A stretch of DNA of 64,000 nt from Gracilinanus agilis (Eukaryota): contig NC_058133.1 of assembly GCF_016433145.1 (NCBI RefSeq), positions 194,560,625 to 194,624,624 on the forward strand. The letters run 5' to 3'. The notes beneath the pieces were generated by a model, which was not told where the DNA came from, did not search any database, and worked only from the letters and a program-made list of their open reading frames with translations. A program made the position numbers and the translations under genes. This document shows, piece by piece, positions 32,769 through 60,107 of the stretch. Numbering within the stretch: position 1 is the stretch's first letter; each line of letters begins with the position of its first letter.

Positions 32769-32999
32769 TAGTCACTTTGGTTTGAGCACTATTCGTGGGG
32801 TCAAGTGCTTAGCTGAGCTGAACATTTACCAGCCCTGGTGGTTACTAGCATACTGTGGTGGCTATTCAGGCATCCCTCTCCTCATTCAGCTTAGATCCAT
32901 ATACCACCTAAGGATCTTGAGCCACCTTCATCAGGCCCATCCTACAGAAGCACCATACCACCCTGTAAAACAACATTCAGTTATAAAGTATTAATGGCT

Positions 33000-35900
33000 T
33001 ATGGCAAAGGGAGGCTAACTTACTAAAAATTACAATACTACCAAAATTAATTTATTCTTTTAATACTATACCAATCAAATTGCTAAGGGAATGCGTTATA
33101 GAACTTGATGAATTAATAACAAAAGTCATTTGAGAAACAAAAGATCTTAGAAAATCAAGGAAATTATGAAAAGAAGTAGGGATGTAAGGGGAAAGCACTT
33201 CTAGACTTCAAACTATATTATAAAGTCATCGAAAATACCTTGTATTGGTTAAAAAATAGATAGCTCAATGAATAGACTAGAAAATTAAGAATCAGAAACA
33301 ATAGAACACAATAATCAAATGTTTGATAAAGTAGAAAACAAAATTACCTAGAGTTACAACAGTGAACAATATGGAAATATGTTTTGCATGATAATTTTTT
33401 TTTTTTTATCCTGGGACTCCATTCTGGGAGCATAGGGCCACAACCAGTAGGCAATGGGACACACAGTTGCTCAGGGTCACCCAGCTGGGAAGTGTCTGAG
33501 CCCGGACTTGAACCTAGGACCTTTCGTCTCTAGGCCTGGCTCTCAATCCACTGAGCTAGCCCAGCTGCCCTTACTTTTAGGTTTGCAGTTTCTTTAGCAG
33601 ATAAATACATGTATAAAATTGCTTACCATCTCCAGGAGGGGAGAGTTAAGGGAGGGAAGGGGACAACTGGGATCTTATAACTTCAAAAAATATATGTGGA
33701 TCCAGAGAAAGAAACATGGGAGTAGAAACATGGAAGAAAAACATTTCCTTGATCACGTAGTTCAGGGAGGACATGATTGGGGATGTAGACTCTAAATGAT
33801 CACTCTATTACAAATATTAATAATATGGAAACAGGTCTTGGTCAATGATACATGTAAAACCCAGTTGAATTGCTTCTTGGCTATGGGAAGAGAGAGGGCT
33901 GGGAAAGAATATGAATCATGTAACCATGGGAAAATATTCTAACTTAATTAATTAATTTAAAGAATATGTGGAAAATTGTTATTACATATAGTTGAGAAAA
34001 TAAAATATCTTTTAAAAAATTTACCTAAGGAAAAGTTCCTTATTTCATAAAAGCTATTGTGAAAACTGGAAATTATCCTGGCAGAAATTAGGCTTAGACC
34101 AATACCTTTTACCATATTCAATAAGACATTTTAAATGTATTCATGACCTTAAGATTAAAGATCATACTTTTGAAAAAATTAGAAGAGAGAAATATATCAT
34201 ACACATCTCACAGCAATGGGTTGGTATATTCTTAACCAAATGAGATAGTGGCAATTACAAAAGATAAAATACACAATTTTCATTACATGAAACTGAAAAG
34301 CTTCTGAATAGACAAAATTAATGCACTTAGGATAAGAAGTGGTTAAATGAAAAAAAAATCTTTGTATCAAACTTCTCCAATAAGGGTCTGATATCCACAA
34401 TATATAAAGTTAATAAATAAAAAAACAAATATATATAACTAATACCCATTCCCCAAAAGATAAATGGTCAAAGGATATGAACAAATAATTGTCAAGAGAA
34501 CTGCAAAGTATTCATAAACACCTGAAAGAATATTCTAATCACTAATAAGAGAAATACAAATCAAAAAAAACTCTGAGGTTTTATTTCAAATATTGCAAAT
34601 TAGCAAAAATGATAAAAAATGGCAATAGTCAAAATTTATGGGGTTGCAGAATGATAGACACATTAAACATTAATACATTTTCGGATAGCAGTGAAATGGT
34701 ATAGCCATTTTGGAAAGCAATTTGGAATTATACAAATAAAGTGACTAAAATGTCTTTGATCTAGAAATTCCATTACTGGGTTTATACTCCAAGGAAGTCA
34801 CTATTAAAAGAAAGTTCCCTACACTCCAAAATATTTATAGCAGCATTTTGTTTTTGGTGACAGTTAAGAATTGGAAACAATGTAGAAGTCCATCAGTTAG
34901 GGAGAAGTTAAACAAATTGTGGTACATGAATACAATGGAATATTTTGTGCTCTAAGAAATGATGTGTGTGATAGATACAAAGAATAATGGAAAGATTTAC
35001 ATGAACTGAAGCAGAGTGAAGAAAGCAGAACCAAGAAAACAATATACACAGTAACAACTATGTAAATGAAAGTATAGCACCACCCCACAAAAATCAAAAG
35101 TAAATGTAAGAACACTTAAAAGATTACTAAGATTCAAATGAAGAGATAAGAGAGGACACTCTCAACTCACTCTTATACAGAAGTAGGATGTTCACAGGTG
35201 TTACATATTGCCTGTTTTTTAACTTTTTCAATCAGTTGTGCTGATCCCCACCCAATACTATTGTTATATGGGATTGCTCTTTGGGAGCAGGATAGGGAGA
35301 GATATTTTAAATAACTATGATCATGTAAGACATAGAAGACATCAATTAAAACATTTTAAAAAAAGAAATGGATTAGGCCAGTTGACTTACTTGTTTAGGA
35401 GACTTAGGGAACAAGTTCCACTTTTGAAGGGATATTTGGTTCAAATCCAGATTCCCTCTGTTTCTTGTCAGCTTATCCCAAAATTAGTTTTAGGACATTA
35501 CTTTGATTCAGCTGAATGATATCAACCTGTCCTTACCTCCTCCCTTCACACAAGAGCCATAATCAAATAGGGACTACATGGGCTTTATTCAAGGGATAAG
35601 GATGAGCATATAGGTTGAACCTATGATTTTAATGGTTAAAGGAATGCTCAAATGAGAAAATTCCTTCTACATATGCAAGTCATTACCTTCTCCACAATTA
35701 ATAATCATAGAGAAAACAAGGATTCTGATTATCACCAATATTATTTAATATTGTACTAGACATGCTAACAATAAGAGAAGAAATCAAAGGTATCAGAATG
35801 GGCAGAGGTAATAAAAATATATCTTTTTATAGATGAACAGGATATAAAATAAACTCACATAAATCATCAGCATTTCTATAGGCCACTAACAGTGTCTTGA

Positions 35901-38941: not shown

Positions 38942-40689
38942 TAGTTTTGTTTGTATATACATTACCTAGCATAATGTTTAGATGAATTTGAATGGAATTG
39001 GCTCAGTAGGAGGAATACCTTGATGTATTATTTGACTATAGAAATAACAGGTAACATTCAAATTTAGCTGTCTACCTTTTTCTTCTTTTTCATCTAAATG
39101 TTTACTGAGCACCAACTCTAACTTAAGCCTGAGAAACTTTGGAGGACACTTTTCCTACTATTTCACTTTTCCACTATTCTGCTCTTCTCCAACTTCTAGG
39201 GATGCCTAACTATTAGAAGTTGTTTCTAAGTAGCAGCTTCTAGGAGAACCATGTATACAGTAACAGAAATGATGATCAAGTATGAAGGACTAAACCATTA
39301 TCAGCATCATAAATTTCCAAGATAACCACGAGGAATTCATGGTAAGTGCTATCCACAGTCAAATAAAACCTTTTGGAGTCTAAGTACAGATCAAAGCATG
39401 CCATCTTCCACTTTATTTCCTTCATGATATTTTTATTGTATGCATGATACATGCTTTTTATCATGATATGAGCAATATGGAAATATATATTGCATGAAAG
39501 TATTAGTATAACCTATATCAAACGATTTTACCACCTGGGAAGATAGGGAGAAAATTGAATCCTAAAATATCAGAAGACAATTGTCACAAATCATTTCTAC
39601 ATGTAACTGCAAAAAAAAAAAATCAAAGTGCTATTTAAAAAAAAAGCAGCTTCTAAAACTCTCCTTCACCTTCTCCAGTTTGTTGGAATTTCACACCTAT
39701 ATAAATTACACTCAGAATTGTTCAAGAACATCTTGAATTATTTGTGTAACACAATTTAAAAGAGAAAAAATGTCTATCTGTTAAGACTCTAGAATTTTCT
39801 TGGCAGTCATTGTGGATTGTTAAATGTGATGACTTGAGAAAAACTGAGAAGACAGAAAGGATGAAAACGACTTTTTTTTTCTGGAAGAGAAGCATTTGAA
39901 TCCTACTTTGCTAAGAGAGTGACAAGAATTATTGAAAAGAGATTTTAATTGGCATTGGAGTGAACTGAGTGGTGGGAATGTGATTTTGTGATTGGGATTG
40001 TGAAGTCACTAGTTAAAGTGATGGTGAGAGGTGACTGACTGCCATCATCTTTCTCATAGCTGAAACATTGTAAATAATCACTTATGTCTTTAAGCCACCT
40101 GTTACTCTGCTAATAAATTGCAAAGCCAGTAATTTTGATATTTTTAAAAGCCTACTTAAGAAATGAGAACATTTCCTTTGCTTGACTCCTATGCTGGTTC
40201 TTCAACCAGGTTATACTCATTAACTGTGGGTATTTCTCCGAAGGTCCTTCTGTCCTCAGCCCTCTTCTCCTCTACATTACATCACTTGATTTCATCAAAT
40301 CCAGTGGATTCAATGACCAGTTCTATGCAGAAAATTCTTACATCCACTCATCACAATATCACATCACAGCCTTTCCCCCTGATCTCTATTACCTACTGCA
40401 TGTTGAACTGGATGGTATATAGTCAATGCAAATTCAACCCATCCAAAACAGAAACCTGTTATCTTTCCTCCAAAGCCCTCCTCTCTTCCCAGATTCCCTG
40501 TCATTACTGAGGGCACCACCATCACCCTTATTATCTATGGTTCATTAGCTAAATGTAATCTTCAACTTCTTACTTGCATTCACCTCACAATCAGTCTTTC
40601 CCTGGAAGGTCACAAGAACTTGGCCCTATTCTAAAGACTATTTGTCTTAACTTTAGAGAACAGGGAGGGCCTTTGAGGATGAAAACCCA

Positions 40690-41450: not shown

Positions 41451-43885
41451 AGTTTGGCTCTTATTGTTAAGCGCCTACTGTGTGCTAAGTGCTGGGGGTA
41501 CAAAGAAAGGTAAAAAGTCAGTCCCTACCCTTTAGAAACTCACAGTCTAATAGGGGAGACAACATGCGAACGGTTGCATAAAGCAATCTGTGGACAGCAG
41601 CAGTGATTTGGCTTATGAGTTGAGAAGAAGGGAGAAAATTAAAGGGAGGGGGCACCCCTGGGCAGAGAGAGGGGAGACATGAGAGACAAGACACCTAGAG
41701 AGAACATCTTGCTCCTCCAAAGAAAGTAAGGTGGCCTCTGCGAATCTGAGGTGGTAGCATTAAGAGGAAGTGGCCAGCTCTCCCGAGGCCCCAGGATGAT
41801 TGCCTCAGTTACTGTTATCCCCTTTCTCCATCTTCCCATTCTCTTCAGGCATATCTTACTCTCTTTTCTCCTCTTTGAGTTTTCCTTCACATCATGCTAC
41901 CAGATGAATCTTCCCCAGGCACAAACCTCATCCTATCACTTTTCTTCAGAATCCCATTCAGTGATTTCCTATTGCTGGTCAAATAAACACCAGACTTTCC
42001 TTCAACTGTCTGAAGTGCCAATTTTGTAGCCTTGTTGTTTAATCTTATTCCCCACTGTCTGTCGTACATTCTAACCAAACTTGACTTCACACTGTCCATA
42101 TTATTATCCCCCTTAAATATCTCTTTTTTGGGAGGGAGGTGAGCTGACACATTTTCTCATACTCTTTCCTCTATGTTATTTACTGATTAGCTCCACTATA
42201 TATGGAACATCCTTTCTTAAAGTCCATATTGGTAAGAGTTGAAGTCCTAGTCATCATTTGAAACACTTTAAATTTTACTTTCTTTATGAAAGTTTGCTTG
42301 CTCTTTCTAGTTGGAATTGATCTTTTAATTTAGCAAACATTTATTAAACTCCCTTTGTGGGCAGAGCACTGTTAATCCCTGAAGGAAAAACATTTAACCA
42401 AGACATGCATGGTTCTTGCATTCCTAGAACTTTTAATCTAGTAGGAAAGAGGAAAAGACACAGATAATAACATAAGTTTATTAGAGAGCTGCAAAATTGC
42501 TCTTTTGAGAGCCAAAAAAAAAGAAGGTTGTTACTGAGTTTGGGAAACAGAGAAGGCGTTATTATGATATTTGAGTTGGAAAAGCTGACTGTTAAGAGGT
42601 GACTGGTATTTATGGAAGGCTCTGTTAAGGAATGGCTGACATTTGTAGGATAGTAGTTATTAAACATTCATTAAGTGCCTGCTATGAGCCTGGCAATGTG
42701 CTAAGCCTTGGGGGGGATAGAGACTGTTCAGTTCTGATCTAGAATCAATCACCTCAATTTAGGCTTGGTCTTATTTGAATGGTCTTGGCTCCCTTGCCAA
42801 AGACGTTGAGAGATTGTGTTACAGAAACACTGAACAGTACATAAAATGTTATTATTATTATTATTGTCAGGAAGGAAACCTTGAAAACCCAGTTTAGCCG
42901 AGTACAAACTCAAATCCCCTTTGCAAGTTGTTCTCATTACAAAGGCTGCCTTTGCTAATTTTGGTATCCCTACAAAAGAAAGGCTTGGACCTCATAATAC
43001 TTTATACTTTTCCACATTATTTTGTCTTGTTTTGCTTTGTTTTGTAGCTTTTTGTAAATGCCTTTAAATATACTCCACAGGAGAAAATATTGTCTTTTTT
43101 TGTAGCTCTTTGGCACCTGTGGCATATAGTTTGTAATTAATAAGTGTTTGTTGAACTGAATTGATGTTTAAGTGAGGAGGATTTTTAGCTATCTTAAAGC
43201 CATCTAAGTTTTTTTTTTAAACCCTTACCTTCTATCTTACAATTGATACTGTGTCATTTATAAGGAAGAATTGTGGTAAAGGCTAGGCAATTGAGGTTAA
43301 GTGACTTGCTCAGGTTCACACAGCTAGGAAGTATCTGAAGCCAAGTTTGAACCCAAGACCTCCTGTCTCTAGGACTGGCTCTCTACCTACTAAGCCACCT
43401 ACCTGCCCCCTACATGCTTTTTATGACAACCTGAGAAGGACTCTATTTATCCTTGAACTCGGTGCACCTTATCCAAAACTCCATAGGTGTGTTGGAGATG
43501 CAACTTTTATTTTTCTGACTGAGATTGTTTTTAGGAGAAAGGGATTATAGTTGCCTTTTTGCTGTCTTCAGTCATCTGAAGCTTTGCCAACTTTGCCAGG
43601 CACTGGCTTAGAGCAGACCCCATAAAGAAAGGCCAAAGGGGCAGCTAGGTGGCTTAGTGGATAGAGAACCGGGGTTCAGATCTGACCTCATAGACTTCCT
43701 AGCTGTGTGACCCTGGACAAGTCACTTAATCTCAATTGCCTAGCCTTTATTGTTCTTCAGCCTTCCATTCTAAGACAGAAAATAAAGGTTTAAAAAGAAA
43801 AAAGCAAAAACAAAAACAATCTTGACCCTCTGAGGGTTTCCATTTTAACAGGAGGAATAACATACAAATAAAAAGTTGCCTACAG

Positions 43886-44064
43886 GGGCAGCTGGGTAGT
43901 TCAGTGGATTGAGAGTCAGGCCTAGAGATGGGAGGTCCTAGGTTCAAATCTGGCCTCAGACACTTCCCAGCTGTGTGACCCTGGGCATGTCACTTGACCC
44001 CCATTGCCCACCCTTACCACTCTTCCATCAAGGAGCCAATATACAGAAGTTAAGGGTTTAAAAA
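43886..44064 (+). mobile_element. SINE1_Mdo-like SINE, young
   Basis: Perfect 16-bp TSD AAAAAGTTGCCTACAG at 43870-85 and 44065-80. Confidence 0.92.
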
Positions 44065-44361
44065 AAAAAGTTGCCTACAGAATAGAAGAGAGATAAACTT
44101 AGAGGGGAAGGCTCAGTGCTAAGAAAGCCATTCTGCAGAGGGTAGAGCTTGAATTGAGTCCCCCAAAAAAGCAAGAGATGTTAGGAAATTGAGATGAGGG
44201 AGAGTATTCCAAACTTAAAGGGCAGAAGGTGCATTGTCACATGTGAGTATCAGGCAGGCCAAAGGTGCTCGATTTCATGGAAGGAATAACCTGAGAAGAG
44301 GCTTGAAAGGTAGGAAGGGCCCAGATGTTATGAAGAGCCTTAAATGGCAAATGCAAACATT

Positions 44362-46267: not shown

Positions 46268-46440
46268 AATCTGAAGAAGAGCTGGCATCCACAGACCCTC
46301 CGAAATGTGGAGAAAGTGTGGAAGGCAGAGCAGAAACATGAGGCAGAACGGAAAAAGATTGAGGAGCTACAGCGGGAGCTTCGGGAAGAAAGAGCTCGAG
46401 AGGAGATGCAACGCTATGCAGAAGATGTGGGAGCTGTCAA
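46268..46440 (+). CDS. CWC25: CWC25 exon 2
   Basis: CAG acceptor; encodes NLKKSWHPQTLRNVEKVWKAEQKHEAERKKIEELQRELREERAREEMQRYAEDVGAV(K); GTAAGT donor at 46441. Confidence 0.97.
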
Positions 46441-46769
46441 GTAAGTGTTGGAATGTAATATTTGGTGAGAACTTTGGAACAAGGATCTTCTCATGTAGGT
46501 TACCAAATTTGCGTGTTTATTTTCATCTTGGGTTGATTTCCCTCCTGCATTTTGCATTTAGCACTTAACACCTGTGTGTCTTGCACACAAGCGATGTTTA
46601 TATGGAATTCACATAAATGCTCCTTCATTTGGGTAGGATTCACTTTGGGAATGTAGGTTTTTTTTTTATAAAAAAAACTTCCCCCTTCAATTAAAAAACA
46701 AAAACAAAAACAAAACCCCCCTGTAAAAAAATATGCACAGTCAAGCAGAACAAATTTCTGATTGGTCAT

Positions 46770-47430: not shown

Positions 47431-47825
47431 AAAACCACCCCCAGCATTACATTCATATACCATTACTCATTCAATCATTCATAAGCACCTCCTTTGTTTC
47501 CAGATCTTAGTCAGCACTAAAAAGCTGTTATAAATATTTTTGTATATGTATTTCCCTTCTTTCTTTGATCTCTTTGGAATATGGGCTTGATATAGTATCC
47601 CCCAACTAAAGATATAAAGAGTTTAGTAACTTTTGGAGCACATTTCCAAATTACTTTCTGGAATGGCTGAACCAATTTATAGCTTCACCAGTAGAATGTA
47701 GGTTTGTATTAAGAAGCCAATGTAGTATTATAGAACAAGGGAATGGATTAGAATACAGAGTCCTGAATTCTAGGAGTATTTCTCCCACTATTAATCCCAC
47801 AACATGTATTAGAAATACTAAAGAG

Positions 47826-48085
47826 GCGGCAGCCAGGTGGCTCAGTGGCTGGAGAGCCAGGCCTAGAGACGGGAGGTCCTAGGTTCAAATTTGACCTCAG
47901 ACACTTCCTAGCTGTGTGACCCTGGGCAAGTCACTTAACCCACATTGCCTATAACTAACTGCTCTTCTGCCTTAGTACCAATACATAGTAGTGATTTTTT
48001 TTTTTTAACCCTTACTTTCCATCTTAGAATCAATACTCTGCCCCCCATAGTAGTGATTCTAAGATGGAAGATAAGGCTTTAAAAA
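47826..48085 (+). mobile_element. SINE1_Mdo-like SINE containing a nested 49-bp antisense SINE remnant
   Basis: Outer TSD AAATACTAAAGAG at 47813-25 and 48086-98. Inner element 47997-48045 has TSD CATAGTAGTGATT at 47984-96 and 48046-58. Confidence 0.88.
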
Positions 48086-48964
48086 AAATACTAAAGAGTT
48101 GTGTACAGTTTTCTGTTGTGTAAAATGAAGATAACGATTTCTAGTTTCAACCTTATTATTTTGGGAGGATAAAATGAAATGTGAAAAACACAAAATCATG
48201 TAATAGATTCTAAAAGTAAAACCATAAATGATTTTCTAGATTTGTTGTATAGGTGCTTCTGTACCATTATTTTCTTCCACTAGTGCAAATAACTAATAGT
48301 TCACTATGTATGTATGGAGGGGACTCCTATAATCAATTACTATCATAATAGCATTTTTAAAAAAACCTGTTACTTTCTGTCTTAGAATTGATACTAAATA
48401 CCAGTTCCAAGGCAGAAGAGCAGTAAGGGGGTAGGCAATGGAGGCTAAGTGACTTACTCAGTCACATTGCTAGGAAGTATTTGAGGTCAGATTTGAATCC
48501 AAGATCCTACTATATTTGGGCCTGGCTCTCTAGTCAATTAGCTGACCCAGCAATAGCATTTAAAATTTATTTTTTTTTATGAGAATTCAGTTCTTTCCAG
48601 ATCACAAGGGCACAGAAGATGGGGGAGCTTATACTATTGACAACAGACTTCACCTTGAGCAAGTCTCCAGAATGGGTCTGTCATACTTCCCTCATTCGAT
48701 ATGCAGAAAGCTCTTCCTCTTTTATTAGCTGATATTTTTTATTTAATGCAGTAAGCATTTATCAAGTGCTTACTTTGTGCTAGGTACCAGAGATACAAAA
48801 ACAAGAGTGAAATAGTCCTAGACTTCAAGGACTTGGTAATTCTAATGGGGAAAATCATGTACCTAGATAAATAATTTCAGGAGAGGGATGAAAGGACCAT
48901 CAACAAAGGCCTCTTTTTGAAAGAGGTATGTGGGATGAGCCTTGAAAGGAGATAGAGGTTTCTT

Positions 48965-54149: not shown

Positions 54150-54386
54150 AAAAAAAGAAGAAAAACTGGACTGGATGTACCAAGGTCCTGGTGGAATGGT
54201 GAACCGTGATGAGTACCTAATGGGTCGTCCCATTGACAAATATGTTTTTGAGAAGATGGAGGACAAAGAAGCAGGTTGTTCATCTGAAACAGGACTTCTG
54301 CCAGGCTCCATCTTTGCCCCATCGGGTGCTAATTCTCTGCTTGACATGGCCAGCAAAATCCGGGAGGATCCACTTTTCATCATTCG
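54150..54386 (+). CDS. CWC25: CWC25 exon 3
   Basis: AG at 54148-49; encodes KKEEKLDWMYQGPGGMVNRDEYLMGRPIDKY...SKIREDPLFII(R); GT at 54387. Confidence 0.97.
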
Positions 54387-55346
54387 GTATTAGCATGGGT
54401 TTGAGAGGGAGGCTTTTTAAGGAAGATTTGCTGAACTGAATTAACTTGAATCTCTTTGTATTGGTTTCTTCTCAACTTCTTTTCCTTTTGAATGTATTTG
54501 TTCATATCTTAAGACTAGGGATCATGATGCTAGGACAACTCAATTAAGGAATTTCTTTAAGTTAACCAGACTTGGAGATAATGGCAAATTTCATAATCTA
54601 ACCCAAATCTATTTTCCTAATTTTGGCCTTTCTCTTGTAAATGTGGCTTCAAATACAGGCTAAAGGAAAACTGGCAATCTTAGAAGTATCTGGGGTTTGG
54701 GGTAAGAAAGAAATGGGCAAGTGGACAAGTTCATCCACTAGATAACTATTGAAACTAAAGTAAGGAAAAGAAAGTACCTTTATTAGGTTGTAGGCTGTAC
54801 ATGGGAAGTGACAGGACTGACCCACCTGTGTGTCCCTTGAATATCAGGATCATCTGGCCTGTAGACAGGGGAGCAATAAACTAGACACTGGGGCTATTGT
54901 GCTCTCATATCTTACTATATTGCTAGAAAAGGTAGAAAATGTGGTTCTTAATTGCTTCTATTGATAGTATAGACTTATTTAAGGGGGATCTGCCTTAAAA
55001 TACTTAGTTTCAGCATTATTTTAGCCAAAGGGAAGGAAGAGCAGAACCTTCCAATTCAGCATTAAGTGTCTTGCTCAATCATTTCTAAGAGGATTTAAGC
55101 ATTGAGCTCCTTGCTCAAATAAGAGGCAGGATGAGCTGATTGCCAGCAGGGAAGAGGAAAAGAACCAGAGCCTTCTAAAGATAATGAGTTCTACAGATTT
55201 GGGAAGGCCTCTGGTTTTAGCACTCTCATAAAGTTCTATATGAGATCTTGATGGATCTGTTTATAACAACGTCCATTTAGAGAATCATTAAATTTCCTTT
55301 GCAAAAAGAAATGTCAGTGATTTTTATTTTTACAATTTGTTTTCAG

Positions 55347-55416
55347 AAAGAAGGAGGAAGAGAAAAAGAGAGAAGTCTTGAATAATCCCGTGAAAATGAA
55401 GAAAATCAAAGAATTA
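55347..55416 (+). CDS. CWC25: CWC25 exon 4
   Basis: TTTCAG acceptor; encodes KKEEEKKREVLNNPVKMKKIKEL; GTAAG donor at 55417. Confidence 0.96.
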
Positions 55417-58349
55417 GTAAGCATTGCGAATAGGAGGACTCCAAAACTACCATTCCAATCATTCGACAAGCATTTATTAAGGGCCTACTATGTGCAAGAT
55501 GCTGAGGATACAAATACAGTAGGGTCTCTTTATCTGAGGTTTGCTTTCCATGGTTTCAGTTACTAGCAGATAGCCTGGAGCATAAGAGATCCACTCAAGA
55601 TGTGCTAGAAGTCTGCTTGCAAAGCCGGTAGAAGTTGCTGTTTGTCCTGGCAGTGTTCTCTTCTGCTTCAGCTTTCAGTCTTTTTTTTGTTGGGGAATGG
55701 TGGGAGGTTGAGGACCTGCATATCTTGTCAAGGTCAGAAGTGGGGAGAGAGAGCACATATATATGAGGGCCAGTAAGCGTTCAGCCATTTGGGATAGTCT
55801 CTTGGAAGGTATTCTCCTCAGATACGGGAACCCTGCTGTAAAATAAGTTAAATACTCTCTACTCAATAGAAGCTTACCTTCTAATAGAGGCAGAGGTATA
55901 ACAAGAACACATATAAGTATATATAGAATATCAATAAATGCAAAATAGTTAAACACAAGATGGTTGGGACAGCTAAGGTAGCACAGTAGCTAGAACACCA
56001 GGCCTAGAGACAGGACATCCTGGGTTCAAATCTGGCCTCAGACACTTTCTAGCTGTGTGAACCTTGGCAAGTCACTTAAACCCCCATTACCTAGCTCATG
56101 TGGCTCTTCTGTCTTAGAATTGTTACTAAGACAGAAAGCAAGGGTTTAAAAAAATATGCAGTGTGGTTTCAAGAAGGCATTAGTGCTTGGCAGTATTAGG
56201 AAAGGAGAAAATGGTATGGTGCTTGAGCCTCATCTTGAAGAGAAAGGCGTTCTCTGAGGCAGAGGTGAGGAAAGAGTGCATTCTGTGCATGAAGACAGGA
56301 GATATGGAGCATCATGTGAGGAACAATGAGAAGGCTTAGTCATGGAGTATTTCATAAAAGAATATCTCAAATTCTTATTCTGTCATAAGTCAGATTTATG
56401 ATCAAGAGCTGGAAGAGATCATCTGGTTCTCAACATCCTTCAGTTTTCTTGTGTTAAAGAAATATCTTTTAGTAGTTATATTTTTATTAATTTAATTTAT
56501 TTAAACCCTTACCTTTTGACTTAGAATCACTACTGTGTATTGGTTCCAAGGCAAAAGAGCAGTAAGGGCTAGGTAGTGGGAGTTAAGTGACTTGCCTAGA
56601 ATCACACAGCCAGGAAGTGATGAGCTAGATTTGAACCAGGACCTCCCATCTGTAGGTCTGACTGTCAATTTACTGTACCACATAGCTGCTCCTGACTATA
56701 TGTTAAATAGAGACAGTTTGTTTCACCATGGCCTTCAAAGCCACAACTAGTCCACTAGAGTAAAGTCCCCCAAATGGTTAAGCAAAATAGCATTAATGAT
56801 ATCTATGACAGCACATGCAGTCTTTCATTTTGATGGTTTATCATTTGTTAAAAGGAAGCAAGGAGTATGCTTTGACTTTAATATAAGTCCATTGTATTTT
56901 ATCAGATTTTTTTCCTTTGAGTGCATTTTTAGTGGAACATGATTCTTTTATCTACTTTTTGATTTCAGGGGAAAATGGCATTGTGTGACAATTTCCTTGA
57001 TAAAAGAGGGACCCTGAATTTTACTGTTTAACAACTGATCATGCTATTTTTTTTTCAGCAGATTGAAGCCTATTGCTGAATTTTTTGACAGAACCCTTAA
57101 CCCTTACCCACTTTAGCTGCTAGCTAGTCTCAGGCACAATCATGCAGAATTTGAAATTTGGAAGGTGTTGTTGCACCTAATATAACCTATACACCAAAAG
57201 AATCCCCATTATACCATACCTGACAAATAGTCATCCTTAGCATCTGTTTAAAGACTCCATGGAGAGGGATCTTGCCACCTCCTAAGGTTGCCTGTTCCAC
57301 TTTTGGACTGCTCTTATTATTAGAGAGTTTTTCCTGACATCCAGCCTAAATTGGCCTCTTTGCAACTTCCACCCATTGTTCCTTATGCTGCCCTCTGGGA
57401 CCAAATGGAACAAATCTCCTCCCCATGACAGCCTTTATTTCTTAAAGTTTTGCCCCCTCTTAATGTAGCCCAAGAATGAATTACCTTTTTTGGCTGCCAT
57501 ATCAATGAGTCAGCAGTCCACTAATTCCTCCCACCCCCAAATTGTTTTCTAAATAATGGATGTCTGTCCATAGCTCCCTTAACTTATACTTGTGAAGTAA
57601 CATTGAGCTGGGAGTCAGATAATCTGATTTTACCACTATTTAAGTCTCAATCTCTCACAGTCTTGGCTTCCTCATTTTATTAAGTGGGGATTGCTACTAT
57701 TTACAGGGAAAGATGTAGAGTACTTTATAAATGTGACTAATTTCTCCACCAAAGACCTCTCTGATGTCTCATTGTGGAAGAAAAACTAAAGACTACAGCA
57801 AGGGAACTTCTGCTATCTCTGGCCAGACTCTACTGGGTTGGAAAGTCTTTGAGAATGAAATATAAATCTTTTTTCTGAGGTCCAGCTTAGTTGAGTTTGG
57901 AGAGATTTGTCACTAGATTGGCCACAGACTGATGGATTTTTTTTTGCTATAGGATCACTCAGAATTTGGTAGTTGAAGGTTTGCCATCTTTGCTGGAGAA
58001 AACATTATTGAATAGTAATAAATGACTCCTTAAAGTAGTATGCTTTGGGCTTAAAATGGAAACTCCTAGAAGCTGTCAAATTTTGATCATGTTCTATACC
58101 ACTGACAACCACAAAGTCATGCAATCAGTAGAAAAGAGGTTTCTTGAGGAGAAGAACATTTTTTATCCTTTTATCCCAGGAGCCTAGTGTGGTGCCCAGC
58201 ACATAGTAGGTGCTTTATAAATGTTGTACTGTCTGTTGAGTGTTTGGTCCCCTAGAAGACAGATTGCTTGAGCCCTGGAACAATCTCACAGGAGGGAGTC
58301 AGGAACAAAAGGTGGAGAGAAGTCAGCATTGTGCTTTGTAATTTTCTAG

Positions 58350-58477
58350 TTGCAAATGAGCCTGGAAAAGAAGGAGAAGAAGAAGAAGAAGGAAAAGAAA
58401 AAGAAGCATAAGAAGCACAAGCATCGTAGCTCTAGCAGTGACCGCTCTGCCAGTGAAGAGGAGCGGAGCCATGGAAG
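58350..58477 (+). CDS. CWC25: CWC25 exon 5 (Lys-rich)
   Basis: TTCTAG acceptor; encodes LQMSLEKKEKKKKKEKKKKHKKHKHRSSSSDRSASEEERSHG(R); GT at 58478. Confidence 0.96.
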
Positions 58478-59225
58478 GTACTTGGAGGAGGCCTTTGGTG
58501 CCCTATTAGCACCCTTGCCTAGAGAGCTCACCTGGTCTTAGTGGTCTTTTATCAGAAAAACCATCTCATTACTGACTTGAGATCTTTCAGCTTCTGATTC
58601 TTAAAGGACAAGAATGGGTTTGTCTGGTGGTGGTTTGTTGTTTTTTTTTTTTTTTTTTTGTTATTTTAAACAGGCTAATCCACTCATTTAAAAATATTTT
58701 TTTATTCTGAACTTAGATGCCAAATTGCATATACTTAGTATAGAAAGAAAGGCTTGTATATGAAACCATACATAGATTATTTTTCTTTTAAAGCATGTGA
58801 TAAAATCCATTTGTAGCTTTCAAAACTGTTTTGCTTCCCTGGCCTTATTTCTGTTCTTTTTCTCCATTTATCCACCCATTCTTGCCCACGCTGTCTCTCT
58901 TCCCTGTGAGCGCAACAGCAGGCACCTCTGCCTCTGACTCATTGTCAGCCTTCAGAATAGCAGCACAAGGTGGGGGGAAAGAACTCCAGTTGGGGGTTGG
59001 GGCTGTCAAGCCAGGCCTACGATTTTTCACAGGAAAAACACAATTGTGCTGATTCGTCCTCCCAGCCAAGAAAACCCAAATAGGGAAACACACTCCCAAG
59101 TAATAACGGGAGTTGGGAAGGCCATGGAGGGGGCAGGAAGTATGTTTGAACATGAAATTAAACTGCTTTACCTCCTTCCTCACACAGTTGTTTGTATCTT
59201 TTTTTGCTTTTAAATTTCTTCTTAG

Positions 59226-59302
59226 ATATGAGTGTGCTCTTACAACAATGACCGATATGGAAGTGTGTTTTGCATGACAATAAAAACAAAATTAAAAAAA
59301 AA
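59226..59302 (+). mobile_element. 77-bp L1-3'UTR-derived insertion with A-tail; its TSD duplicates the CWC25 exon 6 acceptor
   Basis: ACAATGACCGATATGGAAGTGTGTTTTGCATGA resembles L1 3'UTR pieces at ~33365 and ~45230. AATAAA at 59279-84 plus A-rich tail. 14-bp TSD AA(A/C)TTTCTTCTTAG at 59212-25 and 59303-16. Confidence 0.8.
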
Positions 59303-59316
59303 AACTTTCTTCTTAG

Positions 59317-59380
59317 GTCTCAAAAGAAGATGGCAAGTCCTCCTCCTGTTTTGCCCAAAATTCCAGGTTATGGCTTACAG
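59317..59380 (+). CDS. CWC25: CWC25 exon 6
   Basis: AG at 59315-16; encodes (R)SQKKMASPPPVLPKIPGYGLQ; GTAGGT donor at 59381. Confidence 0.94.
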
Positions 59381-60107
59381 GTAGGTACCTGGGCTGCCCC
59401 CAAAGCAGTGCCATCATGCTATTTCTGATCTAGTAGTATTGAGCATCTTTGGCATCTGATAGTTATAAAAGATAATAAGATGCCTAAATATTCTGTGCAG
59501 GCACCTCTGAGGAGGAGCTTTTTCTTTTTCTATCACTTGTTTCTGTTTCTTGGCAGACGGGATACTCCCATGAATTACATGCCAAATTGTCAAGACTGTG
59601 ATTTGGGGTTCCATATCTCTCATTCTCCCTTGTATCCCTTGCCATAGGTCTAGAGTAGGAGAGATTTGAGAAGGGAAGTAGGGCAGGTGGATAGGTTTTA
59701 GAGTTGCTTTTTAAGATTACATTGTTCCTATATTTGCATGGTTGTACCTGCCTTGAAAATAGTTCTGTAAAGACAAGATGATGGGGGTCTGATAGTCTGC
59801 ACAGTGTTTAGAGCACCAGGTCTGGAGTTGGGAGGACCTGGGTTTAAATTTGGCCTTAGACATTTCCCAGCTATGTGACTCTGGGCAAATCACTTAATCT
59901 CCATTACCTAGCCCTTGCTGTTCTTCTGCTTTAGAATTGATACTAAGACAGAAGGTAAGGGCTTTAAAAAAAACAACAAAAAACAAAATGATGGGCTCTT
60001 GATGGCTCCTTATGTGGTCTTGGTGCTTATTCCTTCCTTGGTATCACTCAGTTTTTTCTTTAAACCATAGGTGTCTGAATAGCTCTTTTGCCTTATTCTC
60101 TCTTTAG

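What the first reader, a model, noticed from the sequence alone, without database searches (positions are those of the whole stretch)
59212..59316. Retro-insertion duplicated the CWC25 exon 6 splice acceptor, creating a candidate alternative terminal or poison exon
Seen in sequence: TTTCTTCTTAG occurs twice, 91 nt apart (59215-25 and 59306-16). The copies flank a 77-nt L1-3'UTR-like piece with an A-tail, inserted at a TTTT/AAAT site. The upstream AG keeps the longer ancestral polypyrimidine tract, while the AG adjoining exon 6 has only ~11 pyrimidines after an A-run. Splicing exon 5 to the upstream AG reads ...HGR-YECALTTMTDMEVCFA-TGA (stop at 59275-77), with AATAAA immediately after (59279-84). 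Inference: this would give either a 225-aa CWC25 lacking the RS-rich C-terminus, if polyadenylated there, or an NMD-targeted frameshifted mRNA, if splicing continues. Established: CWC25 is a step-1 spliceosome factor, and many splicing factors are regulated by unproductive splicing. A lineage-specific, TSD-created switch in this gene would therefore be notable. I know of no description of it.
Basis: partly seen in the sequence, partly recalled or inferred. Interest (0 to 1): 0.75.

Follow-up and report, generated by a model that had tools for sequence, protein, structure and literature searches.

The report
L1 insertion duplicated CWC25 splice acceptor
A tiny LINE-1 fragment landed exactly at the intron 5/exon 6 border of the splicing-factor gene CWC25 and copied the last 14 intron bases, leaving two candidate splice acceptors 91 bases apart. 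The insertion is real, but I could not test whether the extra acceptor is ever used.

Summary
TTTCTTCTTAG occurs only at 59215 and 59306. It is the core of a 14-nt direct repeat with one mismatch (59212-25 / 59303-16). The repeat flanks a 77-nt insert that ends in AATAAA plus an A-tail. A 23-nt motif of the insert occurs three times in the window (0 expected). One copy ends an element whose translation matches L1 ORF2p. An A-run followed by such a repeat occurs 3 times in the window against 0.005 in shuffles. The gene is CWC25, and the two flanking exons match human residues 167-209 and 210-230 without a gap. So the downstream AG is the productive acceptor.

The origin by target-site duplication is therefore well supported. 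The functional claim is untested. No marsupial orthologue or transcript could be reached. From sequence alone, the upstream AG keeps the likely ancestral branch point and pyrimidine tract. The productive AG must take a branch point from inside the L1 piece. The upstream AG is thus a credible competitor that would give a premature stop. Nothing indicates regulation. This is a new member of a known kind; the canine merle SINE is the closest analogue. Interest is modest.

The parts
58350..58477 (+). CWC25 exon 5 (its last two bases, AG, begin the split Arg codon)
   Evidence: The translation matches human CWC25 residues 167-209 without a gap. AG|TTG acceptor and G|GT donor read.
58478..59316 (+). 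Intron 5 (839 nt), including the insertion at its 3' end
   Evidence: Bounded by the exon 5 and exon 6 matches. No Rfam family in 55000-59850.
59178..59183 (+). Candidate ancestral branch point, CTCAC with A at 59182. It lies 43 nt before the upstream AG and 134 nt before the productive AG.
   Evidence: yUnAy scan. This is inference, not mapped.
59188..59223 (+). Ancestral polypyrimidine tract and AG-free zone leading to the upstream AG
   Evidence: 75-80% pyrimidine over 20-40 nt. No AG between 59187 and 59224.
59212..59225 (+). Upstream copy of the target-site duplication, ending in the duplicated AG (59224-25), the candidate alternative acceptor
   Evidence: the repeat finder family D1.
59226..59302 (+). 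77-nt 5'-truncated L1 3'-end-like insert in sense orientation
   Evidence: 59240-77 is 87% identical to 33354-91. The 23-nt motif has 3 copies against 0 expected. Alignments.
59273..59278 (+). ATGAC inside the insert, with A at 59277, 39 nt before the productive AG. It is the best candidate for a new branch point and overlaps the TGA.
   Evidence: The AG-free zone 59264-59314 means the branch point for the productive acceptor should lie in the insert. Inference.
59275..59277 (+). In-frame TGA if exon 5 is joined to 59226. It lies 103 nt before the end of exon 6.
59279..59284 (+). AATAAA, probably the L1 RNA's own poly(A) signal
   Evidence: The A-tail starts about 10 nt after it.
59294..59302 (+). 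A-tail of the insert. The A-run continues into the first two bases of the downstream TSD copy.
59303..59316 (+). Downstream TSD copy: a 10-nt pyrimidine run plus the productive acceptor AG (59315-16)
   Evidence: Protein continuity at human residues 209|210.
59317..59380 (+). CWC25 exon 6 (64 nt), with donor GT at 59381-82
   Evidence: The translation matches human residues 210-230. Bat orthologue tblastn.
32999..33391 (+). Degraded L1 whose 3' terminus (33354-91) is the closest relative of the insert in the window
   Evidence: The 32987-33130 translation matches human L1 ORF2p residues 805-846, E 5e-5..
39475..39497 (+). Third copy of the L1-like motif. Here it continues into other sequence rather than an A-tail.

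Best explanation
A heavily 5'-truncated LINE-1 3' end (77 nt, with its own AATAAA and A-tail) was inserted by target-primed reverse transcription. It lies in sense orientation, exactly at the intron 5/exon 6 border of CWC25.

Shown:
- The bottom strand was nicked at ATTT/AAAA.
- The top strand was cut 14 nt downstream, right after the acceptor AG. The 14-nt target-site duplication therefore copied a short pyrimidine run plus AG.
- The downstream copy abuts exon 6 and is the productive acceptor, because the coding sequence stays continuous with human residues 209|210.

Inferred:
- The ancestral branch point and long pyrimidine tract now lie 134 nt away, behind three AGs. Productive splicing must therefore use a branch adenosine inside the L1 piece, with ATGAC at 59277 the best candidate. 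It relies on only 10 pyrimidines.
- The upstream copy keeps the ancestral branch point, tract and AG. It is therefore a competing acceptor.
- Its use adds 91 nt (a frameshift) and meets TGA after 16 codons, 103 nt before the next junction. Such mRNAs should be removed by NMD.

My reading is that this is unproductive by-product splicing tolerated by the gene, at a low to moderate level, and not an evolved switch. My probabilities: origin by TSD about 0.9; upstream AG detectably used about 0.6; regulated use below 0.1.
For: - Repeat and insert anatomy.
- The TSD-plus-A-tail signature is far above chance: 3 observed against 0.005.
- The two other such events in the window are tRNA-like SINEs with TSDs of similar length. 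The same insertion machinery was therefore active in this genome.
- L1 relationship.
- CWC25 identity and exon borders.
- Branch-point, pyrimidine and AG-free-zone layout.
- Literature: AGs between branch point and acceptor are normally excluded and, when created, often take over or silence the acceptor (PMC1431707; PMC9284458).
- Literature: retro-insertions into 3' splice sites disturb splicing (PMC3219598).
- Literature: the merle SINE shows choice between original and cryptic acceptor governed by branch-point distance (PMC7349775).
Against:
- RNA-like runs X1-X23 hold 0.08-0.13 of the sampled words. That is about what exons 5 and 6 alone would give (about 0.10 by my count) and below the roughly 0.16 expected if the 91-nt extension were also held. 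This hints weakly that assembled transcripts are mostly canonical. Those runs carry other organism codes than the DNA holder and were never laid.
- CWC25 is, from my own knowledge, an essential first-step factor. A strongly used poison acceptor should have been selected against.
- Branch points are predicted, not mapped.
- No empty site was seen in any relative.
Confidence: 0.55

Rival explanations
1. The duplicated upstream AG is a functional, lineage-specific switch. It gives either a composite terminal exon polyadenylated at the L1 AATAAA, producing a 225-aa CWC25 without the RS-rich C-terminus, or a poison-exon-type extension that tunes CWC25 level through NMD, possibly by autoregulation.
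For: - The upstream AG has the stronger intron-side context.
- The stop lies 103 nt before the next junction, which meets the usual NMD rule.
- AATAAA follows the stop, with a U-rich stretch after the A-run.
- Many splicing factors use unproductive splicing (papers listed, none of which mention CWC25).
Against: - No reads, no annotated isoform and no conservation data.
- Among the proteins retrieved, the only CWC25-like one of about this length (227 aa, P0004) reads through intron 4, a different event, and is 94% identical to the window's exons, so it is not this genome's protein.
- Poison exons of splicing factors are typically deeply conserved. This element is a TE insertion with no sign of constraint.
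- A poly(A) site immediately before a used 3' splice site is rarely chosen (own knowledge).
Confidence: 0.08
2. The upstream AG is effectively silent. Exon definition, the purine-rich start of exon 6, the G at +1 and repressors on the old tract direct virtually all splicing to 59317. The duplication is then a neutral scar.
For: - The gene is intact and its exon 6 border is the conserved one.
- The word shares of RNA-like runs are close to the exon-only expectation.
- An 10-nt pyrimidine run is not unusual for this gene; exon 5 also has a modest tract.
Against: - The upstream site keeps a perfect yUnAy, an 80% pyrimidine tract and an AG at a normal 43-nt distance.
- By the first-AG rule it should be chosen whenever the old branch point is used (PMC1431707; PMC9284458).
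- No RNA structure hides it: fold z = +1.2.
Confidence: 0.3
3. The repeat is not a target-site duplication. It would be a chance or slippage duplication in T-rich intron sequence, an assembly artefact, or an allele private to the sequenced animal.
For: - The repeat is pyrimidine-rich and of low complexity.
- Only one DNA run holds the stretch (X24, share 0.99), and it may be the source sample itself.
Against: - The A-tail abuts the downstream copy. The insert carries AATAAA and an L1-like motif found 3 times against 0 expected.
- The chance expectation is 0.005 per window.
- The target site fits the L1 endonuclease preference.
Confidence: 0.04

Closest known systems
Canine merle allele: SINEC_Cf insertion at the PMEL (SILV) intron 10/exon 11 border (PMC7349775, PMC6091007)
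   Same: An L1-mobilised retro-insertion sits exactly at an acceptor and is flanked by a roughly 15-bp target-site duplication that contains the original acceptor. The insertion pushes the old branch point away from the original AG, so two acceptors compete.
   Different: Merle is antisense, so its tail supplies a poly(T) tract and the cryptic acceptor lies inside the SINE. Tail length sets the outcome, the allele is polymorphic and it has a visible phenotype. Here the insert is a 77-nt sense L1 end, the competing acceptor is the duplicated target site itself, and no transcript or phenotype data exist.
Disease-causing Alu/L1 insertions into 3' splice sites, e.g. NF1 (PMC3219598)
   Same: L1-endonuclease-dependent insertions into the AG or the pyrimidine tract of an acceptor, with TSDs.
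   Different: Those are about 300 bp or longer, are de novo, and cause exon skipping and disease. This one is very short, keeps a minimal acceptor through the TSD, and sits in a gene that still has an intact coding exon structure.
[quoted passage not shown]
   Same: The layout leaves AGs between the old branch point and the productive acceptor. This is the configuration in which a first AG takes over or silences the acceptor.
   Different: Here the extra AG comes with a full copy of the acceptor core and 77 nt of new sequence that can supply its own branch point. The two sites may therefore act as independent 3' splice sites.
Poison exons and AS-NMD autoregulation of splicing factors (SR proteins, TRA2B; PMC11791180)
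   Same: The predicted product is a PTC-containing mRNA of a spliceosome protein.
   Different: Known cases are ancient, highly conserved and experimentally responsive to the factor's level. None of this is shown here.

Membership tests
L1-mediated (TPRT) retro-insertion | Direct repeats (TSD, typically 7-20 bp) flank the insert | tested here: met
   14 nt with 13/14 identical, at 59212-25 and 59303-16. Shuffles give 0.005 such events per window.
L1-mediated (TPRT) retro-insertion | A 3' poly(A) tail directly abuts the downstream TSD | tested here: met
   The A-run 59294-59302 runs into the TSD and is preceded by AATAAA at 59279-84.
L1-mediated (TPRT) retro-insertion | The target resembles the L1 endonuclease site 5'-TTTT/AA-3' on the primed strand | tested here: met
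   The pre-insertion top strand reads TTTT|AAATTTC. The bottom strand therefore reads ATTT/AAAA at the nick. The consensus is from my own knowledge and PMC3219598.
L1-mediated (TPRT) retro-insertion | The insert is homologous to a LINE-1 3' end, or to another L1-mobilised RNA | tested here: met
   38 nt are 87% identical to the terminus of an ORF2p-matching element at 33 kb, and the motif occurs 3 times against 0 expected. Only about 50 of the 77 nt align, and no family consensus was available.
L1-mediated (TPRT) retro-insertion | An empty site with a single copy of the target exists in an allele or a related species | not testable with these tools
   No marsupial locus could be reached. The echidna intron 5 is GC-rich and cannot be aligned.
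Poison exon / AS-NMD switch of a splicing factor | The alternative junction is seen in transcripts | not testable with these tools
Poison exon / AS-NMD switch of a splicing factor | A premature stop lies more than 50-55 nt upstream of a later exon junction | tested here: met
   TGA at 59275-77 and the exon 6 end at 59380 give 103 nt.
Poison exon / AS-NMD switch of a splicing factor | Evolutionary conservation, or response to the factor's own level | not testable with these tools
   No orthologues and no expression data. The element is a TE insertion.
Composite terminal exon / intronic polyadenylation | A poly(A) signal with a usable downstream element, and mapped 3' ends | tested here: inconclusive
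   AATAAA is present and a U-rich stretch follows the A-run. No 3'-end data.
CWC25 (pre-mRNA splicing factor CWC25 homolog) | Cir_N and CWC25 domains, collinear with human CWC25 | tested here: met
   Pfam PF10197 and PF12542 both score above their cut-offs. PDB chains 5yzg_X and 6zym_t match residues 73-143, 167-209 and 210-230.

The most novel reading that the evidence does not exclude
The L1 insertion rewired the 3' splice site of an essential first-step spliceosome factor. Productive CWC25 splicing would now depend on an L1-derived branch point. The displaced ancestral branch point and tract, with the duplicated AG, would act as a lineage-specific AS-NMD (or truncating) outlet whose use responds to spliceosome or CWC25 activity.
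Probability: 0.07. Interest if true: 0.65.

Novelty: new member of a known kind. Interest (0 to 1): 0.3.

Why it matters
If the upstream AG is used, this is a clean natural experiment on 3' splice-site choice. An intact ancestral branch point, tract and AG would compete with a minimal acceptor rescued only by a 14-nt target-site duplication and an L1-borne branch site, in a gene the spliceosome itself needs. It would show how a retro-insertion that should be harmful can be tolerated, and how a TSD alone can create an alternative acceptor. Without transcript data it remains a well-documented insertion scar with a testable prediction.

Tried and rejected
Local scripts used the whole window file only as a BLAST subject.
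2. Orthologues or transcripts through proteins.
   - The ORF over exon 6 gave no candidate.
   - The exon 3 ORF returned only short ORFs on contigs under 8 kb. They look placental-like and may be human contamination, so I did not fetch or compare those contigs.
   - The representative search gave no marsupial sequence.
   - The word search with a lizard CWC25 (P0006) listed 120 of 526 hits with no marsupial, checked by local tblastn.
   - Exact look-ups of window ORFs are not on record.
Exons were searched one by one by reference.
4. Outgroup. The echidna locus L001 has a single acceptor in a short GC-rich intron that cannot be aligned, so it is uninformative about the empty site.
5. Two metagenome pattern scans, one exact and one degenerate for exon 6, were both empty.
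6. I tested whether the A-tail pairs with the old U-tract and loops out the upstream AG. The fold of 59165-59330 has z = +1.2, so there is no support.
7. No ncRNA in the intron: Rfam found nothing in 55000-59850.
8. Literature on CWC25 unproductive splicing: none of the listed papers mentions CWC25.
9. No MaxEnt-type splice score was computed, because no model is installed. I report only transparent counts.

Full report
**The observation**

TTTCTTCTTAG occurs only twice in the 64-kb window, at 59215 and 59306. The repeat finder extends the pair to 14 nt: AAATTTCTTCTTAG at 59212-25 and AACTTTCTTCTTAG at 59303-16, 91 nt apart with one mismatch.

The 77 nt between the copies (59226-59302) end with AATAAA (59279-84), an A-rich stretch and an A-run that abuts the downstream copy.

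As a chance control I asked how often an A-run of 8 or more is followed by a 14-mer that recurs, with at most one mismatch, within 400 nt upstream. This holds for 3 of the 16 A-runs in the window. Local shuffles give 0.005. The other two cases are tRNA-like SINEs with A-tails and 14-nt duplications. This is therefore the ordinary signature of L1-driven insertion in this genome.

**What the insert is**

- Positions 59240-77 are 87% identical to 33354-91.
- A 23-nt motif from the insert has three copies in the window (33369, 39475, 59255) against none in 100 shuffles.
- The 33-kb copy lies at the 3' terminus of a degraded element. The translation of that element (32987-33130) matches human L1 ORF2p residues 805-846, E 5e-5 (sequence, frames).
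- The 39-kb copy continues into further sequence instead of an A-tail. The insert may therefore come from an L1 subfamily, or from an early-polyadenylated L1 RNA, that ends just after this motif.
- Only about 50 of the 77 nt align, and no consensus library was at hand. 'L1 3'-end-like' is supported but not proven to family level.
- The pre-insertion top strand reads TTTT|AAATTTC. The primed bottom strand is therefore ATTT/AAAA, close to the L1 endonuclease preference.
- The second nick fell exactly after the acceptor AG. That is why the duplication ends in AG.

**The gene**

Window ORFs carry the Pfam domains Cir_N (46307-46444) and CWC25 (54175-54390), both above their cut-offs. Exon translations match the human CWC25 chain of spliceosome structures (5yzg_X, 6zym_t) at residues 73-143, 167-209 and 210-230.

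Exon 5 is 58350-58477 and exon 6 is 59317-59380. Their human matches are contiguous (209|210), so the downstream AG (59315-16) is the productive acceptor. A bat orthologue places exons 2-8 at 46.3-60.8 kb on the + strand, and one search shows all the acceptors.

I left out any search with a joined, spliced model.

Joining 58477 to 59226 gives AG|A, that is Arg, then YECALTTMTDMEVCFA and TGA at 59275-77. The genomic ORF 59113..59277 shows the same frame. The extension is 91 nt, a frameshift. The stop lies 103 nt before the exon 6 donor, so the usual NMD rule is met. '225 aa' follows if the unseen exon 1 encodes six residues, as in other species.

**Splice-site anatomy**

| Feature | Upstream AG (59224-25) | Productive AG (59315-16) |
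|---|---|---|
| Pyrimidine context | 80% over 20-30 nt | 10 pyrimidines, then the A-run; 50% over 20 nt, 43% over 30 nt |
| AG-free zone | 59188-59223 | 59264-59314 |
| Best branch-point candidate | CTCAC, perfect yUnAy, A at 59182, 43 nt away | ATGAC, A at 59277, 39 nt away, overlapping the TGA |

AGs lie at 59224, 59231 and 59262, between the old branch point and the productive AG. Branch point and acceptor are normally separated by an AG-free zone. An AG created there often takes over or silences the acceptor (PMC1431707; PMC9284458). Two inferences follow.

1. Productive splicing cannot easily use the old branch point. It must use an adenosine inside the L1-derived sequence.
2. Whenever the old branch point is engaged, the upstream AG is the first AG met.

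The upstream site is thus a credible competitor. A hairpin that might hide it is not predicted: the fold of 59165-59330 has z = +1.2.

**Transcript evidence**

None was obtained. The look-up of sequencing runs returned one run holding 0.99 of the sampled words (X24, organism C), which may be the source sample. It also returned 23 RNA-like runs of organisms A and B holding 0.08-0.13.

By my count, exons 5 and 6 alone would give about 0.10, and about 0.16 if the 91-nt extension were also held. This hints only weakly that assembled transcripts are mainly canonical. The runs were never laid, and their organism codes differ from that of the DNA holder.

Local scripts used the whole window file only as a BLAST subject.

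**Orthologues**

- None of my three word searches reached a marsupial protein (checked).
- The representative search found no marsupial sequence. It gave the lizard protein P0006 that I used as query, and a 227-aa form (P0004) that reads through intron 4 in another species, which is a different event.
- The short ORF hits at 96-97% identity look placental and could include human contamination. I did not fetch or compare their contigs.
- Exact look-ups of window ORFs are not on record.
- Two metagenome scans were empty.
- The echidna locus shows one acceptor in a short GC-rich intron that cannot be aligned to this one.

The empty-site test and the 'lineage-specific' claim therefore remain open.

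**Comparison with known cases**

The nearest analogue is the canine merle allele. A SINE sits at the PMEL intron 10/exon 11 border with a 15-bp TSD containing the original acceptor. The increased distance from the branch point shifts splicing to a cryptic acceptor (PMC7349775).

Alu insertions into NF1 acceptors cause exon skipping (PMC3219598).

This case differs in three ways. The insert is a very short sense L1 end. The competitor is the duplicated target itself. And the gene keeps an intact exon structure.

No paper on unproductive splicing of CWC25 turned up.

**Verdict**

The insertion and the duplicated acceptor are real, and the TSD origin is about 0.9 likely. I put detectable use of the upstream AG at about 0.6, most likely as tolerated, NMD-cleared by-product splicing. 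I put a regulated switch or a stable 225-aa protein below 0.1. This is a new member of a known kind. Interest is modest until junction reads are counted.

Noticed in passing
window 43872-44081 and 47813-48099: Two tRNA-like SINE copies (GGCAGCTGGGT... head) with A-tails and 14-nt target-site duplications. The second copy carries a nested T-run and extra piece.
   Followed up: partly
window 32999-33410: A degraded L1: the ORF2p-like stretch (human residues about 805-920) runs straight into a 3'-terminal motif, so some 350 codons and most of the 3' UTR are missing. A 13-nt T-run follows instead of an A-tail, perhaps the tail of an inverted element inserted there.
   Followed up: partly
window 39240-39600: An L1-3'UTR-like stretch that shares the ATATGGAAAT...TTGCATGA motif but continues for more than 100 nt. 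The motif is therefore internal to at least one L1 lineage and terminal in another.
   Followed up: no
window 58640-58662: A T-run of more than 20 nt in CWC25 intron 5, about 160 nt after the exon 5 donor. It is probably the tail of an antisense retro-insertion.
   Followed up: no
window 55378-55566 and protein P0004: In this window the frame stays open past the exon 4 donor (KIKEL|VSIANRR...). A 227-aa database protein from another species (P0004) is exactly such an intron 4 read-through form of CWC25.
   Followed up: no
L001 11725-11945 (echidna CWC25): Echidna intron 5 is only about 150 nt and very GC-rich, against 839 nt and AT-rich here. Exon 6 has the same phase but a diverged peptide.
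   Followed up: partly
window 7278-7506: A run of 229 N (assembly gap or masked).
   Followed up: no
I worked beside them and did not examine them further.
   Followed up: no
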